Notes under the pieces: model-generated
What the model was told of the DNA's origin: nothing
The model's input: only the letters and a program-made list of their open reading frames with translations
The model's database searches: none
DNA from: Diadema antillarum
Taxonomy: Eukaryota
Length of the DNA stretch: 64,000 nt
Direction of reading: 5' to 3'
Assembly (NCBI RefSeq): GCF_040938485.1
Contig: NW_027272008.1
Span: 868,001 to 932,000, forward strand
Program-made: the position numbers and the translations under genes
Part shown: positions 7,301 through 13,300 of the stretch, in pieces
Numbering within the stretch: position 1 is the first letter of the stretch
Layout: every line of letters starts with the position of its first letter

Positions 7301-10300
7301 CTCCAAGACAAAACTAAAAGAGTGTTCAGTGTTTTCTGTGCATACACATTTTTTTTTTCTTTTCCTAGAGCTGGGGGAGGACTGGCCTTGCAAAGAGCTG
7401 AGTTATTGTCAGGCAGTGTAACAAAAGGAGAAATAAATGAAGCAACTTGTCATCATCGTCATTCCAAATCTTACAAAGTTCAGAATGGTCCCATAATTCG
7501 ATGTGTTAAAAAAACAGAAAAAGGCTTACTTGATCGGCATATTCTGTCTGGAATTCAATTCTCCTCCACACTATTTCAGGGTTCCATCAACATTTCTGCC
7601 AGTATTTTAAGCTGAGTCTGTAGACTGCAGACTGACACAATTACTACGCACTTTTTCCCCATCATTCTCATTTACCAGGAAAGCCAAGCGTTGCTATGAG
7701 ACAGCATTTGAATTGAATCCAGCCAATGAGGGCGCTGCAATTGCCCTGGGTGACATGTGCGATACACTGGATGACAAGGTAATGCCGCTTTAATGTTTAT
7801 TCACTGTGTTGTTTGTTAATGACTTTGTTATCAACTGTGGACCGAACAAAATTTTTTAACCCATTGAGGACGTTTTGATTTTGCTACAACACGCATTTCC
7901 CATAGACACCTATCTGAGTATACTTGGGACTTGTCTTCAGAGGGTCAATCAATGTTTGCGATGCCCATTAGATGGAATTCAGTACCAAAATTGTGTGCAG
8001 TGTTAGTTTTCTCCCAGTTTCTTTTATGTCTGTATGTATGGCTTTGAATACTGAACAAAAATAGAACAGAATGGAGCAGAAAGATTTACATCAATATTCA
8101 CTTTGATAAAAGCTCAGAGCATTATAAGCTTTATTATTATGATTACTACATAATCCTTAGTCATTGACACTTAAATTTAGAGCCTTGGTACAAATTTGAA
8201 AAGAAATATTAATATCAGATATTCCAAATTTGAAGTAAAGTGCATTAGCAATCAACCCATCGTGTTGAGGGACTCCTCGATTTTATTTCCTTTCAAATTT
8301 CAATCTAGTTGTTAACTGAAGGTTTACTGTAACACAAGGAATGTTCACATGAATTTTAATTTCGCAAATTTTGTGAGAGCCAAGATTTGCGAAATTAAAA
8401 TGCACATGAAAGTTCTTGTCTACACTATGCATTGAATGCCAGTGGATATTTGGGAAAATTCTATGCCGCAAAAAAGGCCGGCGGCTCCAATTCCCAAAAA
8501 TTTCATGCCGCGAATATATCGTGTTTTACAGTACACTTCCTCAGCTATTCTCTCGTTATGGATGACCTTTGCAGGAGGGGGCTGTAAGCCTATACCAGAA
8601 GGTGACCAGTTTGGTTACTGGGGCCAGGGCCTCGTGGGCGTGGCTTAGATTGGGACTTGCTCAGCTGCGGGCGGGGGATGCTACTGACGCTGCACAAAGG
8701 TCTGTTGATCTGAAATAGCATGATTATTTAGCTGTTTTCTGTACCTGCATTGAGTTTGTAATAGTCATCATTATGTGGAAGGATTTGACTGGCTTGGTAA
8801 TGAGCTCAATTTAAAGTGATCATGTATTGTTGTTTTTAACTTTGTTGGTTATAATGTGTCACTGTGATGATGCATTTGAATGCTTTCGCTGATGCTGTAC
8901 CATTGATTTCAAAGTTCTTACCATGAGTTATAATCATTTTCCTTTATAACCTGATACTGAAACCCCTAGAGACTATGCACAGCTCTCACCAGGCTCTCAC
9001 AGTCTATGGGTTTCGTAGGTGCCGTGAAAAACCTGCTGGTTCATGCTGTGAATGGGATCAATTTGAGATCCAGTCATACATCAAAATTTAATTTGAGACT
9101 TTTTTGATGATGTCTCTAACATTAAGATGGCACTGAACTCTCTGTTCCAATCAGAACTGTCCAATTTTAACCGAGCACTAGAACTGAGTGGAAGATACAA
9201 CTGTAGTAGAAGTCTACATGCATTTCTAGCTCATGAGACTGCAACTGGTTGGACACAGAAACTGTCTAGAAAGCAGCAATCAGCCTGGTATGGAGAGCTT
9301 CTCCCAGGGGATGCTCATGAATGACAGGTTCTTTGGTGTTTAGTTGCAAGTGTATCAAAATTTAAAGCAATGTAGATATGTCTAATACTATTCATTTTCC
9401 CATCACTCCTTTCCTTCCTGCTATTTTGTGTCTTCATGTCTATGCAGTTTCCAGGAGGTTCTTCGGAAAGATCCCAATAATAAGTAAGTGAACAAGTTTC
9501 CTTCTTTCATACATTGTCTTATTTTACATTCTGCAACGAGAAAGATATTAATTGTTCAAGCGAAATTATGATCTTCAATAGACCTTAGTCCAATTAGAAA
9601 GGACAAGTCAGATAATCATGATAATTTTGTTGCAACTGATTGACAAATTGCCCTACATCGACGTAAATAAGCACTGAATTGATCAGTGTTTAGTAGTAGC
9701 CATGATAAAAAATCATGGGCGTACATACTCGAGCAGGATTCGAACCCACGACCTCCTGATCACCGTTTTTTATTTACGTCTTATTTACGTCTTATTTACA
9801 CTTATTTACGTCGATGTAGGGCAATTTGTCAATCAGTTGCAATGAAAACATCTCGACGGAAGAACTTCATAAATTACAATAACAAAGCAGTACCCGCTGC
9901 ATGCTATAAGGATTAGAACCAACACTTGCTGTCGGGCGAAAGCTCGGTGGTCTAGTGGAGATGACGCCTGTTCGGTGATCAGGAGGTCGTGGGTTCGAAT
10001 CCTGCTCGAGTATGTACGCCCATGATTTTTTATCATGGCTACTACTAAAAACTGATCAATTCAGTGCTTATTTACGTCGATGTAGGGCAATTTGTCAATC
10101 AGTTGCAATGAAAACATCTCGACGGAAGAACTTCATAAATTTGAATGATAATTTTGTATTATAAAAAAAAAAATTATTCTGAAAGTTATATTTGTTCCAG
10201 TGTTTGCGATCAGAGCTTAAAAGTCAACTTTATTTCCTCCTTTTATAGGCACTGTCTAGAATGCCTGGCAGAGGCATACCTCAGTGGTGGGAGTTATGAG

Positions 10301-13300
10301 TCTGCTCATAAGGCCTTCTCAAGAGTTCTGGAGGTGAGGCTGTTCATTCACTTGCCTGGTTTATTCTCATTGTTGTATACTGGAGATGAGGTTGACAATG
10401 TGCTCACCTTGTAGCTCATTCTTTAGATATAGGCATGACTTGAAAGCACCATTTTGCTTGCCTTCTAGCTTACCTGTTTAGAGTCAATATGAAGTTGTTA
10501 CTGTAAAACATGATATATTCGCGGCATGAATTTTTCGCGAATTGGAGCCGACGGCCTTTTATGCGGCATGAAATTTTCGCGAACTGCCACTGGCATTCAA
10601 TGCATATAGTGTAGACAAGAACTTTCGCGTCCATTTTAATTTCGCGAATCTTGGCGCTCGCGAAATTCGCGAAATTAAAATGCACGCGAAAATTCCTCGT
10701 TTTACAGTTATCTATTCAAAGTATATCTTCTTACAGTATTAGATTTGAGGTGAGGTTGGCGATATGTTTATTTTGTAACTCTACATTTCAGAATAGAGGT
10801 GTGGTTTCCTATTAGCACATTAAGTTTTTGTTTCAAACTGTAGTTGGTTTTTGTGGTCTTTGTATCTCTTGTGTAGTTCATTAAAGGTTCAAATTGTGTC
10901 AGAAATTAGACATTCAAATCAGATATTGCTTCTTTTCCAGTGGTTGGTTGTTTTTCCAAGGCCAGAAGTATGTAGTCAACCATTCAAACAAACAACTGAT
11001 TGGACATACATATATATTGAGATAGATGATTCATTATGATTTATAACAATAATGTGCTTTTCTGTTTTAATAAAATGATTTGTATTGCATACGAATGTGG
11101 TTTAGATTCAAGCATGAGTCCAATCCTAACCATATTGTCATGCATTCATTTTAATAGATGGATCCAAATTCGACATACTCCATGTTCAAGTAAGTGAGAT
11201 TGTTTCTCAGATGAAAACTGTACATCAATAGCTTTTTAAAGGTTTGAGAAAGTCTTATTCTAATAATATCCTTCTTTCATTTATCTTATTCTAATCTAGT
11301 TTTTTAAGAAAACTGAAGTAAAGTTAAGTAATGCAAGTGAACAGGTTTACAATTTGTAAAGTATTGTGATTATCAGGAAACAAGTGAATGTATCTATAAG
11401 GACAGCCATGTGACTTTACTACAAGTCTTTCATTAGTGCATTGTGCACGTCAAAACACTGGGCATTCAATCTCTGTAGTAGGTGAATTACTGTGTGTACG
11501 TTTCAGGATTGAGACCTTGTCTGTAGCAAATATTATGTAGTTTATTGTACTATATTCAAGTCCCAAAACTTCCTGACTGTAGATAGATACCAGTATACAG
11601 AAAGTGCCATATATTTCATGGGCATACTGTTTTGTGAATTGGGACTTGTGAAATATGCGACTTGGAACCATATCGATTGAATGAGAAATAACCATTATCC
11701 CTCTTGAGGAGAAGAGTTAGTGATTTCCCATCCCTCATACAACACATTATATTTTTGTGTGACAGGAGACAATATTCCATGAATTGTTCATTTTGTGTAT
11801 ATTGGTTGCTTTGCACAATTGACAAAAACAGATGCACCGTGAATTAAATGGTGTACACAGTATCAAAATTTTTTTTTCAAATCTTACATTTGATAGGATT
11901 GGCTGTATCAAGCAGACCAGGGGCTTGTACTCAGAAGCAATTACTGTCTACCAGGCCGTCCAGGAACTCTCGCCGGACTATGTCCCAGCGTTGACTGGTG
12001 AGGGCAATGTGCAGAATTTTCTTTGCTGCTTTTCACACCCACACATTTTTTGTCCCCTAAAAGGGATTATGTTCTCATCTGCTTGGGAAAATTGTATATT
12101 TTATATCCCAAGAACCCAGCTGATCTAGTTATCTCTCATTGACTCTATTTCTTAAATTTGGTAGAATTTGTGGACCCAATGCATTATTATGTAAGTATGC
12201 AAAATATGTAATATCATATGTGTTATTTTAGAGAAAGCATTTTGTGATTTTAAATTTGTAGGAGCATTTATAACTGATCGAAGTAAGTACACTGTAAGTG
12301 AAAGTGTGTGTGCATGTGTACATGGATACATGTGTGTGAACTAGTAAGTGTGTATACTGGTATCTGTGTGTGCTGGCATTTGTCCTGAATCACACACAGT
12401 CAAATTATAAAAGATTGCCATGTTTTTATAACTCTGCATGTCAAATGACATGCTGAAATCAGAGCTTGATGAAGAGTGTTCTATCCACTGTCGCACCATA
12501 CCATGTACTCTGTAGGTCAGGGTGAGACCCACCTCCTGTTGGCGAGGGCAGGCCTCAGAGAGTTCTTCCATGCCAGGGCTGTATCCCACATTCAGCAGGC
12601 TGTCAGTGTCCTCACCCGGTGAGTGCTTTGGGTCGACTGGCGATCTTCTTGATGTTAACCTGTTGAAGACGAGTCCCGAGTATACTCGCGCAGGTGTCAA
12701 TGGGAAATGCGTGTTGTAGCAAAATCAGCCCTTCCTCAACGGGTTAAGATTATTCAGGGCTGGCGGTCATAGAGTACACCCTCAAATGCTTACCTATGTG
12801 TGGCTACTTGAGGATGTCTGCAGCCTAACAGTTATCATGCTTTGTTTGCTGATGAGCATGGGCACTACTGGAGTGCTTTCTTTGCTGTATATTGGCACAG
12901 TATGTCTCAGAAACAAATTGTCAATGAATAGAGATTATCTAATCTCTATTTTGTATATGAATAGAGATTACCTAATCTCTATTTTGTCTCCATGGCCTAT
13001 CTGTTGGACTGAGGCTTATATTGCTTATACCCCAGTGGGCTTGCTAACCTTTACAATACAGGTCAAGTTTGGCTTGATCACTGAATGCCAATGAAAAGCT
13101 TGGTAACTCTAATAGGCTAAGTACAGTAGCTTGGCACATAAAGGTTGAAGTTTCACACTGAAATAGAGAGTTTAAACCTTTGGATTGATTTAGAATATCA
13201 GTAGTTCAAGCATTAAGATGAGGTAAAGAATTAGTCTTGATCACAGTTTTTGGACAGAATTTTCTGTGGCATCTTGAATGGCAGGAACTATGTAACAACA

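What the first reader, a model, noticed from the sequence alone, without database searches (positions are those of the whole stretch)
9618..10157. Single-event insertion combining a tRNA cassette with Penelope-like inverted-plus-tandem geometry
Seen: a 514-bp insert between 13-bp TSDs (atgataattttgt). It begins with a 136-bp inverted copy (9630-9765, one mismatch) of 9973-10108, then an 11-bp stutter (ttatttacgtc-like x3), then a 266-bp unit plus a 74-bp terminal redundancy (9802-9875 = 10068-10141). The unit holds a GAAA-capped stem (cgggc-gaaa-gctcg), a near-complete tRNA cloverleaf with A/B boxes, a hairpin around a T6 run (ccatgat-tttt-atcatgg) and a second hairpin (actga-tcaat-tcagt). Established: partial-tandem pseudo-LTRs with an inverted 5' copy are typical of Penelope-like elements, and metazoan retrozymes are short PLE-mobilised tandem units; ordinary SINEs lack this geometry. 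Inference: a non-autonomous, Pol III-driven, PLE-mobilised element, possibly copied from a circular or multimeric RNA. I could not find a canonical hammerhead core (CTGANGA..GAAA), so any self-cleavage motif would be non-standard.
Basis: partly seen in the sequence, partly recalled or inferred. Interest (0 to 1): 0.75.

Follow-up and report, generated by a model that had tools for sequence, protein, structure and literature searches.

The report
Penelope-style insertion of tRNA-bearing tandem repeat
The 514-bp insert is one young copy of an abundant 267-bp repeat that carries a tRNA-like module and no ribozyme, and it was laid down in the two-armed, "tailed" way so far described only for Penelope-like retrotransposons, so it is a passenger of those elements and not a new kind of mobile DNA.

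Summary
In detail: 13-bp target-site duplications, an inverted 135-bp arm, an 11-bp stutter, then 1.28 direct units. It is no one-off. The 267-bp unit occurs at least thousands of times in this genome (sea urchin according to earlier notes of this scan, untested here) at 98-100% identity, from single arms to head-to-head arrays of 45 units.

In 47 arms from about 30 independent insertions, every 3' end lies at one of two sites: ...CAGTTGCAA (unit 232-244, mostly 233), or about 37 nt further on (...AAATTTGAA[TAA]). All 21 two-armed insertions carry one end of each kind. TSDs are mostly 9-15 bp. This matches the published Penelope-like element (PLE) signature: partial tandems, an inverted 5'-truncated copy, a 30-40-bp "tail" at one end, and both DNA strands primed from two internal RT start sites. 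Intact RT+GIY-YIG PLEs abound here and show the same hetero-ended arms.

Not supported: Pol III as the source of the template, because a T6 terminator precedes both start sites. No hammerhead or other known ribozyme was found. No autonomous partner was identified, and circular RNA could not be tested.

Earlier follow-ups of this scan found related tRNA-like PLE passengers on other DNA of this genome. Verdict: a new variant of a known kind, of moderate interest.

The parts
9618..9630 (.). Left copy of the 13-bp target-site duplication ATGATAATTTTGT
   Evidence: the repeat finder family D4. TSDs of mostly 9-15 bp flank the other two-armed insertions of the family.
9631..9765 (-). Inverted, 5'-truncated arm (unit positions 233 down to 98). 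Its outer end is RT start site 1 (...CAGTTGCAA).
   Evidence: Inverted repeat I1 and BLAST at 99.3%. Twenty-one of 47 arms end at 232-244. The site-1 19-mer is followed by a non-consensus base 1401 times genome-wide, against 152 at an internal control position.
9766..9800 (+). Filler at the head-to-head junction: GTTTT plus about 2.9 copies of TTATTTACGTC (a re-copy of unit 192-202)
   Evidence: the repeat finder family D2. Other loci join their arms with 0-7 nt of overlap or with small extra pieces. Read here as template slippage or switching (inference).
9801..9875 (+). Direct arm, first and 5'-truncated unit (unit 192-266), which forms the pseudo-LTR-like partial tandem
   Evidence: Family D1. 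Position 192 lies in a hot spot for 5' ends: 12 of 47 arms start at 192-203.
9876..10141 (+). One full unit of the repeat (266 bp here; the family consensus is 267 bp)
9940..10014 (+). tRNA-like module (Thr-GGT-like) with good A and B boxes and an imperfect acceptor stem
   Evidence: ARAGORN. Rfam tRNA at 39.1 bits against a gathering score of 29.
10020..10040 (+). Hairpin CCATGAT-TTTT-ATCATGG, whose T6 run (10026-10031) reads as a Pol III terminator
   Evidence: Read directly from the sequence; the stem is in the predicted fold.
10074..10125 (+). Predicted stem-loop (unit 199-250). The ACGTCGATGT strand pairs with ACATCTCGACG, and RT start site 1 lies inside it. Candidate recognition element for the reverse transcriptase.
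   Evidence: RNA fold with z = -2.85. An ACGTC motif also lies 22-34 nt before the short end in PLE families C and D. No covariation test was possible.
10109..10146 (+). The 'tail': about 37 nt between RT start site 1 (after 10108) and site 2 (after TGAA/TGAAT). It is present on this arm only.
   Evidence: All 21 two-armed insertions carry the tail on exactly one arm. This matches the 30-40-bp PLE tail in PMC8557442, PMC3846280 and PMC11167929.
10145..10157 (.). Right copy of the 13-bp target-site duplication

Best explanation
The insert is one retrotransposition event of a young, non-coding, 267-bp repeat family that is copied by the machinery of endonuclease-positive Penelope-like elements (PLEs).

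Proposed mechanism (inferred): a PLE protein, probably a dimer, makes a cut staggered by roughly 9-15 bp in AT-rich DNA. It uses both 3' ends as primers on unit RNA that is longer than one unit. Copying starts internally at two fixed sites about 37 nt apart: after ...CAGTTGCAA, and after ...AAATTTGAA. One DNA end starts at each site. Both cDNAs run towards the 5' end of the RNA, stop at variable points, and are joined head-to-head by microhomology or slippage.

That sequence of events would give exactly what is seen here: TSD, inverted arm ending at site 1, stutter, partial unit, full unit ending at site 2 (the 'tail'), TSD.

Shown: the anatomy and its recurrence across the family. Inferred: which protein does the copying, the dimer model, and the nature of the RNA. 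The template is tRNA-sense and most likely a Pol II or read-through transcript, or a re-used single unit. It is unlikely to be the short Pol III product.
For: 1. The geometry at 9618-10157 is confirmed.
2. The family is large and young. There were at least 182 matches at 98-100% identity among only 38 of 776 candidate regions scored. The site-1 19-mer occurs 7392 times exactly.
3. In 47 arms from about 30 independent loci, 3' ends fall only at 232-244 or at 264-266 plus 2-10 nt, while 5' ends vary.
4. All 21 two-armed insertions have one end of each kind. TSDs are mostly 9-15 bp with different flanks at each locus.
5. Genome-wide, the site-1 19-mer is followed by a non-consensus base 1401 times, against 152 at an internal control position, and most of those 152 are variants fixed across whole arrays.
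6. Published PLE hallmarks match: partial tandems, an inverted 5'-truncated copy, and a 30-40-bp tail at one end only (PMC8557442; PMC3846280). The purified Poseidon protein nicks and extends both strands and starts at two adjacent internal sites, the stretch between them being the tail, a feature described as unique to PLEs (PMC11167929). Pseudo-LTRs (pLTRs) alone can mobilise unrelated sequence in trans.
7. This genome holds many PLEs with RT and C-terminal GIY-YIG in one open frame. Their own copies show the same hetero-ended arms. Family D in L070 has two perfect 1195-nt inverted arms, one with a 63-nt tail. Family C has a short end and an end about 55 nt longer.
8. Both arms of an insertion share variants private to that array. 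Mean differences per unit are 0.84 between opposite arms, 0.99 within an array and 4.35 between loci, so both arms were copied from one template species.
Against: - No autonomous partner was found. The unit shares no sequence above shuffled controls with the 3' regions of the five PLE families sampled. The only hit, 39 nt at C1071, is a lone family fragment.
- PLE families A, C and D, the three whose 3' ends could be read, insert into (TA)n. This family inserts into ordinary AT-rich sites, so its partner, if any, is unsampled.
- No hammerhead is present, although canonical PLE pLTRs usually carry one.
- The only shared motif (ACGTC, 22-34 nt before the short end) is short and could be chance.
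- Expression of the unit was not demonstrated. Only contigs were available, and one true RNA contig touches the unit.
Confidence: 0.85

Rival explanations
1. This concerns the template and is compatible with PLE copying. Arrays are regenerated from a single unit, either by rolling-circle reverse transcription of a circular unit-length RNA (as proposed for retrozymes) or by repeated realignment on one short RNA. They are not copied from long multimeric transcripts of existing arrays.
For: Arrays are internally almost uniform yet differ from each other (0.99 against 4.35 differences per unit). Private variants are fixed in every unit of both arms: L008, L040, L005 and L037, and C318, where 17 minus-strand and 28 plus-strand units all carry the same T>G change. 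Arms reach 28-37 units, or 7.5-10 kb. The unit junction is identical in nearly all arrays. The 11-nt stutter in the window shows that the enzyme can re-copy a short stretch.
Against: No self-cleaving ribozyme is present to make unit-length RNA with ligatable ends. Some arrays are heterogeneous inside: L005 reads A,A,T,T at one site, and L018 and L022 hold scattered variants. A uniform source array, or later homogenisation, would give the same picture. The loci studied were the best-scoring ones, which favours uniform arrays. No RNA data could separate circles from multimers.
Confidence: 0.25
2. It is an ordinary Pol III-transcribed, tRNA-derived SINE mobilised by a LINE. The inverted arm arises by twin priming and the tandem part by later duplication.
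For: The tRNA-like module has good A and B boxes. TSDs of mostly 9-15 bp and variable 5' truncation fit any target-primed reverse transcription. Junctions show microhomology.
Against: There is no A-tail or simple-repeat tail. The outer end of the inverted arm is fixed (233 +/- a few nt in 21 arms), not variable as in twin priming. All 21 two-armed insertions pair site 1 with site 2. Both arms can hold many units. The T6 terminator lies upstream of both start sites. No fixed 5' end exists.
Confidence: 0.05
3. It is a satellite or a DNA-level rearrangement (unequal exchange, a fold-back, or re-integrated circular DNA) and not a retrotransposition product.
For: Long tandem arrays and palindromic arrays exist. 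The assembly contains duplicated loci.
Against: Dozens of dispersed insertions have different flanks and clean TSDs of mostly 9-15 bp. The 3' ends are fixed and the 5' ends vary. At least 1401 dispersed site-1 ends exist genome-wide.
Confidence: 0.03

Closest known systems
Insertions of endonuclease-positive Penelope-like elements (Penelope/Poseidon; Pen2a_Av of Adineta vaga; PAc of Anolis)
   Same: Partial tandem forming a pseudo-LTR, an adjacent inverted 5'-truncated copy, a roughly 31-40-bp tail on one arm only, short TSDs (8-10 bp in the rotifer), AT-rich targets, two internal RT start sites, and priming from both strands.
   Different: No ORF: the whole unit is 267 bp. It carries a tRNA-like module and no hammerhead. 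No sequence is shared with the PLE families sampled here. The three of those families whose ends could be read land in (TA)n, while this family does not.
Metazoan non-LTR retrozymes (Cervera and de la Pena 2020, PMC7229834; Li et al. 2026 preprint, doi 10.64898/2026.07.22.740005)
   Same: Non-coding tandem units of 170-400 nt, low GC content, TSDs longer than 4 bp, and a proposed dependence on PLEs.
   Different: Retrozymes are defined by a type I hammerhead that cuts out unit RNA for circularisation. None is present here. Neither paper mentions a tRNA-like module, the tail or inverted arms.
SM-alpha SINE-like repeats of Schistosoma mansoni (Ferbeyre et al. 1998, as cited in PMC8490949)
   Same: A SINE-like unit of about 335 bp found both dispersed and in tandem. 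From my own memory of the 1998 paper, not checked here, it also has Pol III promoter boxes.
   Different: SM-alpha carries an active type I hammerhead. This unit does not.
Non-autonomous Chlamys (PLE) derivatives such as MRC1 of Chlamydomonas (PMC8557442)
   Same: Non-coding passengers that form pLTRs and multi-copy head-to-tail insertions.
   Different: Those share their 3' ends with identified autonomous families. No such partner was found here, and they carry no tRNA-like module.
tRNA-derived SINEs mobilised by LINEs
   Same: An internal Pol III promoter derived from a tRNA, short length, and TSDs.
   Different: No fixed 5' end and no A-rich or LINE-type tail. There are two fixed 3' start sites, tandem and inverted arms, and a terminator directly behind the tRNA-like part.

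Membership tests
PLE-mobilised (non-autonomous) element | Partial tandem copies forming pseudo-LTRs | tested here: met
   The window holds 1.28 direct units. Other loci hold 1 to 37 units per arm.
PLE-mobilised (non-autonomous) element | An inverted 5'-truncated copy adjacent to the upstream end | tested here: met
   Window 9631-9765. Twenty-one of about 30 independent loci are two-armed.
PLE-mobilised (non-autonomous) element | A 30-40-bp tail at one end only, reflecting two internal RT start sites | tested here: met
   The ends lie at unit 232-244 and at 266 plus 2-10 nt, giving a tail of about 37 nt. All 21 two-armed insertions are hetero-ended.
PLE-mobilised (non-autonomous) element | Short TSDs at AT-rich targets | tested here: met
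   TSDs of mostly 9-15 bp with AT-rich flanks.
PLE-mobilised (non-autonomous) element | The 3' or pLTR sequence is shared with an autonomous PLE of the same genome | tested here: inconclusive
   No similarity above shuffled controls to five sampled families.
PLE-mobilised (non-autonomous) element | Autonomous RT plus GIY-YIG elements present in the genome | tested here: met
   At least 146 GIY-YIG matches, with open frames up to 1031 aa. RVT_1 and GIY-YIG lie in one frame in four families.
Metazoan non-LTR retrozyme | A type I hammerhead ribozyme in each unit | tested here: not met
   No hammerhead or other ribozyme in Rfam at E<=10, in the window or in a canonical array. No CTGANGA core on either strand.
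Metazoan non-LTR retrozyme | Tandem non-coding units of about 170-400 nt | tested here: met
   The period is 266-270 bp.
Metazoan non-LTR retrozyme | Unit-length circular RNA in vivo | not testable with these tools
   Only assembled contigs were available. Junction-spanning sequence is also present in genomic tandems.
tRNA-derived SINE (LINE-dependent) | An internal Pol III promoter (A and B boxes) | tested here: met
   TGGTCTAGTGG and GGTTCGAATCC lie within the tRNA-like module. This was tested by sequence only.
tRNA-derived SINE (LINE-dependent) | A Pol III transcript that spans the whole element up to its 3' tail | tested here: not met
   A T6 run lies 13 nt after the tRNA-like module and 80-120 nt before both 3' ends.
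tRNA-derived SINE (LINE-dependent) | A fixed 5' end and an A-rich or LINE-derived 3' tail | tested here: not met
   The 5' ends are spread over the unit and no A-tail is present.

The most novel reading that the evidence does not exclude
In this family a host-recognised tRNA-like module has taken the place that the hammerhead ribozyme holds in other Penelope passengers. The module would be folded, and perhaps modified or cut, like a tRNA within the template RNA. Arrays would then be rebuilt from a single unit by rolling-circle or realigning reverse transcription. That would make it a ribozyme-free route to 'retrozyme-like' tandem retroposons.

Hints: 5' ends of arms cluster in the anticodon loop (11 of 47 at unit 92-106, around tRNA position 37) and at the foot of the 3' stem-loop (12 of 47 at 192-203). 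Every unit of both arms shares variants private to its array.
Probability: 0.12. Interest if true: 0.75.

Novelty: new variant of a known kind. Interest (0 to 1): 0.45.

Why it matters
How Penelope-like elements insert is still poorly understood. The two-site internal initiation and the priming of both strands were shown in vitro only in 2024, for one lizard element.

This family offers a small natural substrate: 267 bp, thousands of young copies, both start sites mapped to within a few nucleotides, a candidate stem-loop around site 1, and a strict pairing of one site-1 end with one site-2 end at each insertion. That pairing is stricter than the in vitro work reported, and it suggests that two coordinated enzymes act at one break.

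The family also shows that PLE passengers need no hammerhead, which bears on what the ribozyme is for. In practice, such two-armed arrays carrying tRNA-like modules will be mis-annotated as SINEs, fold-back elements, MITEs or tRNA gene clusters, and they break assemblies.

Tried and rejected
1. Hammerhead or other ribozymes. Rfam at E<=10 on the window locus and on a canonical array, plus a core-motif scan on both strands, found nothing.
2. Autonomous partner.
   - BLAST (word size 7) of a unit dimer against 30 PLE loci, and Smith-Waterman alignment against shuffles for five families, found no shared sequence.
   - The single 39-nt hit at C1071 looked like the 3' end of a PLE. Its 581-nt context recurs in full at only three places, and its middle belongs to an unrelated repeat of about 330 bp. 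I read it as a lone short arm of the family.
   - Of the family copies listed and the GIY-YIG matches, the only shared contig (C967) holds them about 566 kb apart, and the listed site-1 19-mer hits are not close to GIY-YIG matches either.
3. A 9-mer (GCAGTACCC) is shared between the tail of PLE family C and the unit just after site 2. It does not exceed chance.
4. RNA evidence. One search and one lay of four runs gave only contigs. One contig from a true RNA library covers 112 nt of an arm that ends at site 1 in foreign sequence. This gives no conclusion on expression, strand, ends or circles.
5. Other tRNA-like families for comparison. None occurs in the window or in 44 loci.
6. Covariation for the tRNA-like module or the stem-loop. 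Copies are too alike (98-100%). There is only one hint: G>A at 9991 in a related organism turns a G-U pair of the T-stem into A-U.
I fetched no more loci and did not try another tool for it. Later genome searches used counts and coordinates only.
Full report
**1. The observation**

Reading 9400-10400 and running the repeat finder confirms every element of the description.
- ATGATAATTTTGT occurs at 9618-9630 and at 10145-10157.
- 9631-9765 is the reverse complement of 9973-10108 with one mismatch.
- 9766-9800 holds GTTTT followed by about 2.9 copies of TTATTTACGTC.
- 9801-9875 is identical to 10067-10141.
- 9876-10141 is one full unit.
- ARAGORN calls a tRNA-like module (Thr, GGT) at 9940-10014. 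Rfam's tRNA model scores it 39 bits against a gathering score of 29, with several non-canonical pairs.
- It is the only tRNA-like sequence, and the only Rfam match at gathering score, in the 64-kb window.

**2. It is a family, not a one-off**

The 266-bp unit finds at least 182 matches at 98-100% identity in the window's own 1.75-Gb assembly, with only 38 of 776 candidate regions scored. Earlier notes of this scan call the genome a sea urchin, Diadema antillarum. I did not test that, but runs labelled as echinoderm hold the repeat.

The consensus unit is 267 bp and has no natural start. Units follow each other seamlessly through ...CATAAATT-TG-AATAAC.... The window's copy reads AC where nearly all others read TG.

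Exact-pattern counts over the whole genome:

| Pattern | Count |
|---|---|
| 19-mer just before the first end site | 7392 in total |
| that stretch reading on into the canonical tail | 2370 |
| last 22 nt of the tail | 851 |

The window's subfamily therefore belongs to a larger group that shares the site-1 region. Arrays reach 37 units in one arm (contig C2). One head-to-head array on C318 has 17 and 28 units.

**3. Anatomy across copies**

I analysed about 30 independent loci with flanks. Four further loci proved to be duplicates of others and were set aside.
- Of 47 arms, 21 end at unit 232-244 (eleven of them at 232-233, ...CAGTTGCAA). The other 26 end at 264-266 by BLAST, and the sequence then runs on 2-10 nt into TGAATAACAA, so that end lies after ...AAATTTGAA(T/TAA). 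No arm ends anywhere else.
- The stretch between the two sites is about 37 nt.
- All 21 two-armed insertions combine one end of each kind. None has two like ends. If the sites were chosen independently, about half would.
- TSDs are mostly 9-15 bp (median 13) with unrelated flanks, so these are separate insertion events.
- The 5' ends vary but are not random. Eleven of 47 lie at 92-106, in the anticodon loop of the tRNA-like module. Twelve lie at 192-203. About five would be expected in those 27 positions.
- The window's two arms start at 98 and 192, so both lie in hot spots.
- Arms meet with 0-7 nt of overlap, a few unmatched nucleotides, or small extra pieces. The window's 35-nt stutter is the largest filler seen.

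Genome-wide, the site-1 19-mer is followed by a base other than the consensus T 1401 times, mostly as dispersed single sites. An internal control 19-mer gives 152 such cases, and most of these are one variant fixed through whole arrays.

**4. What this anatomy is**

The literature held here describes exactly this pattern for Penelope-like elements.
- Insertions are strongly 5'-truncated and organised in partial tandems (pseudo-LTRs), often with an inverted 5'-truncated copy next to them. A 30-40-bp extension, the tail, is often present at one end only and is not seen in LINE insertions (PMC8557442).
- In Adineta vaga, two direct pLTRs plus one inverted pLTR are flanked by TSDs of 8-10 bp, with a 31-bp tail on one of the inverted pLTRs. 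pLTRs alone moved an unrelated gene in trans (PMC3846280).
- Purified Poseidon protein of Anolis cuts and extends both DNA strands and starts reverse transcription internally at two adjacent sites that are not homologous to the target. The tail is the stretch between those sites. The authors call this signature unique to PLEs (PMC11167929).

The family in the window meets each of these points.

**5. Comparators in the same genome**

A GIY-YIG search finds at least 146 matches, in open frames of up to 1031 aa, many of them in minus/plus pairs and tandems. [quoted passage not shown]

Their own copies show the same style.
- In L070, two perfectly identical 1195-nt arms lie head-to-head in a (TA)n tract. 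One ends at ...TTTTCACAC and the other runs 63 nt further.
- Family C has a short end (...TCTCACATA) and an end about 55 nt longer.

So the machinery that makes hetero-ended, two-armed insertions is present and looks active.

**6. What does not fit, or is open**

(a) Partner. The unit shares nothing above shuffled controls with the 3' regions of the five sampled PLE families. Families A, C and D, the three whose ends could be read, end in (TA)n, while this family uses ordinary AT-rich sites. A partner therefore remains to be found.

(b) A weak shared motif. I confirmed AGCTACGTC in family D and AGCAACGTC in one further element near two family D loci, while family C carries the variant TGCAACGTC. 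In families D and C the ACGTC core lies 22 and 34 nt before the short end. The unit has TTTACGTCG 30 nt before its short end. This is a five- to six-letter agreement and could be chance.

(c) Ribozyme. No hammerhead or other Rfam ribozyme is found at E<=10, in the window or across canonical junctions, and no CTGANGA core exists on either strand. The unit therefore fails the defining test for a retrozyme.

(d) Pol III. The A and B boxes are good, but a T6 run lies 13 nt after the tRNA-like module and 80-120 nt upstream of both start sites. A Pol III transcript would end before the part where copying begins. The template is tRNA-sense, because the fixed ends are 3' in that orientation. It is more likely a read-through or Pol II transcript. 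This is inference.

(e) RNA. Only assembled contigs were available.
- One contig from a true RNA library covers 112 nt of an arm that ends at site 1 in foreign sequence. Nothing can be said about level, strand, ends or circles.
- The same lay shows the family at very high summed depth in two runs of a related organism. That organism's single-copy flanks differ from the window by about 5-10%. The canonical TG junction is present there.

**7. Template: multimer or re-used single unit**

Units within an array differ by 0.99 positions on average. Units of opposite arms of one insertion differ by 0.84. Units of different loci differ by 4.35.

Several arrays carry a private variant in every unit of both arms: L008, L040, L005 and L037, and the 45-unit array on C318. 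Both arms were therefore copied from one template species in which all units were alike.

Copying long transcripts of uniform source arrays would explain this. So would regenerating arrays from one unit, by rolling-circle copying of a circular RNA or by realignment on a short RNA. The second reading explains more simply how a new mutation comes to occupy a whole array. However, there is no ribozyme to make circles, and some arrays are heterogeneous (L005, L018, L022). The loci studied were also the best-scoring ones. I leave this at about one in four.

**8. Structure**

The unit RNA folds better than shuffles (-80.4 kcal/mol, z = -2.85).

Besides the tRNA-like part and the two small hairpins, the fold predicts a stem-loop from unit 199 to 250. 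In it, ACGUCGAUGU pairs with ACAUCUCGACG, and site 1 lies directly 3' of an inner six-pair helix. This parallels the stem-loop in which Poseidon initiates, and it is a candidate recognition element. Copies are too alike for a covariation test.

**9. Rivals**

- LINE twin priming would give a variable outer end on the inverted arm, a tail of A's or simple repeats, and no strict pairing of two fixed sites. None of that is seen.
- DNA-level rearrangement or satellite spread cannot give dozens of dispersed insertions with clean TSDs and fixed 3' ends. Arrays may still grow by unequal exchange after insertion.

**10. Novelty**

The insertion style is known. Non-coding PLE passengers are also known: hammerhead retrozymes, SM-alpha, and the Chlamys derivatives.

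In three literature searches I found no description of a hammerhead-free PLE passenger that carries a tRNA-like module. The two retrozyme papers I read mention neither tRNA-like modules nor the tail.

Earlier follow-ups of this scan had already met related tRNA-like repeats of 305, 325 and 328 bp with Penelope-style insertions on other DNA of this genome. The kind of element is therefore not new to the scan. This report adds:
- the two mapped start sites;
- the strict hetero-ended pairing;
- the different target preference;
- the terminator argument against Pol III;
- the array uniformity shared by both arms;
- the 5'-end hot spots.

I rate it a new variant of a known kind, of moderate interest.

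Noticed in passing
G000:C140:3705262-3705773 (L002); also the pairs L005/L031, L038/L044 and L040/L041: The window's insertion exists a second time in the assembly with identical flanks and TSD, and with the canonical TG at the unit junction where the window has AC. Three other loci are likewise duplicated, one pair on the same contig C208 about 520 kb apart in inverted orientation. They look like retained haplotigs or large duplications.
   Followed up: partly
L070:689-3157 (G000:C197); L062, L064, L066 and L067 (family C); L053-L055 and L065 (family A): Three families of RT+GIY-YIG Penelope-like elements all end in (TA)n or (TC)n microsatellites. Families C and D have an AATAAA, then a GC[AT]ACGTC motif (AGCTACGTC in D, TGCAACGTC in C), then a short end at ...CACAC or ...CACATA and an optional tail of 55-63 nt. 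Family A ends ...GCAGCTTTGTTACTTA and lacks the motif.
   Followed up: partly
47 arms in loci L001-L050; in the window, 9765 (unit 98) and 9801 (unit 192): The 5' ends of arms cluster at unit 92-106, which is the anticodon loop of the tRNA-like module around tRNA position 37, and at unit 192-203, just 5' of the predicted stem-loop. This could reflect RNA cleavage, a modified base that blocks the enzyme, or structure-induced template switching.
   Followed up: partly
G000:C318:340197-351986; G000:C2:5629944-5641150: There are very long head-to-head arrays: 17+28 units on C318, all carrying the same T>G variant, and 37+4 units on C2. The C2 minus-strand arm ends at site 1.
   Followed up: no
window 9440-9490 and 10249-10332: The flanks look like exons of a host gene: open frames bounded by AG and GT. 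A related organism's contigs cover 10215-10422 with roughly 5-10% differences but not the surrounding intron-like DNA. The insertion therefore probably sits in an intron. The gene was not identified.
   Followed up: no
window 9991 (T-stem of the tRNA-like module): In runs of a related organism most copies read A where the window reads G. That turns a G-U pair of the T-stem into A-U. It is a one-sided change that keeps the pair.
   Followed up: no
L063:2288-2400 (G000:C548): A copy of PLE family C is interrupted about 490 bp after its stop codon by two tandem copies of a roughly 55-bp unit that contains the palindrome GGTGATACGCTATCAGCGTATCACC. It is unrelated to the finding.
   Followed up: no
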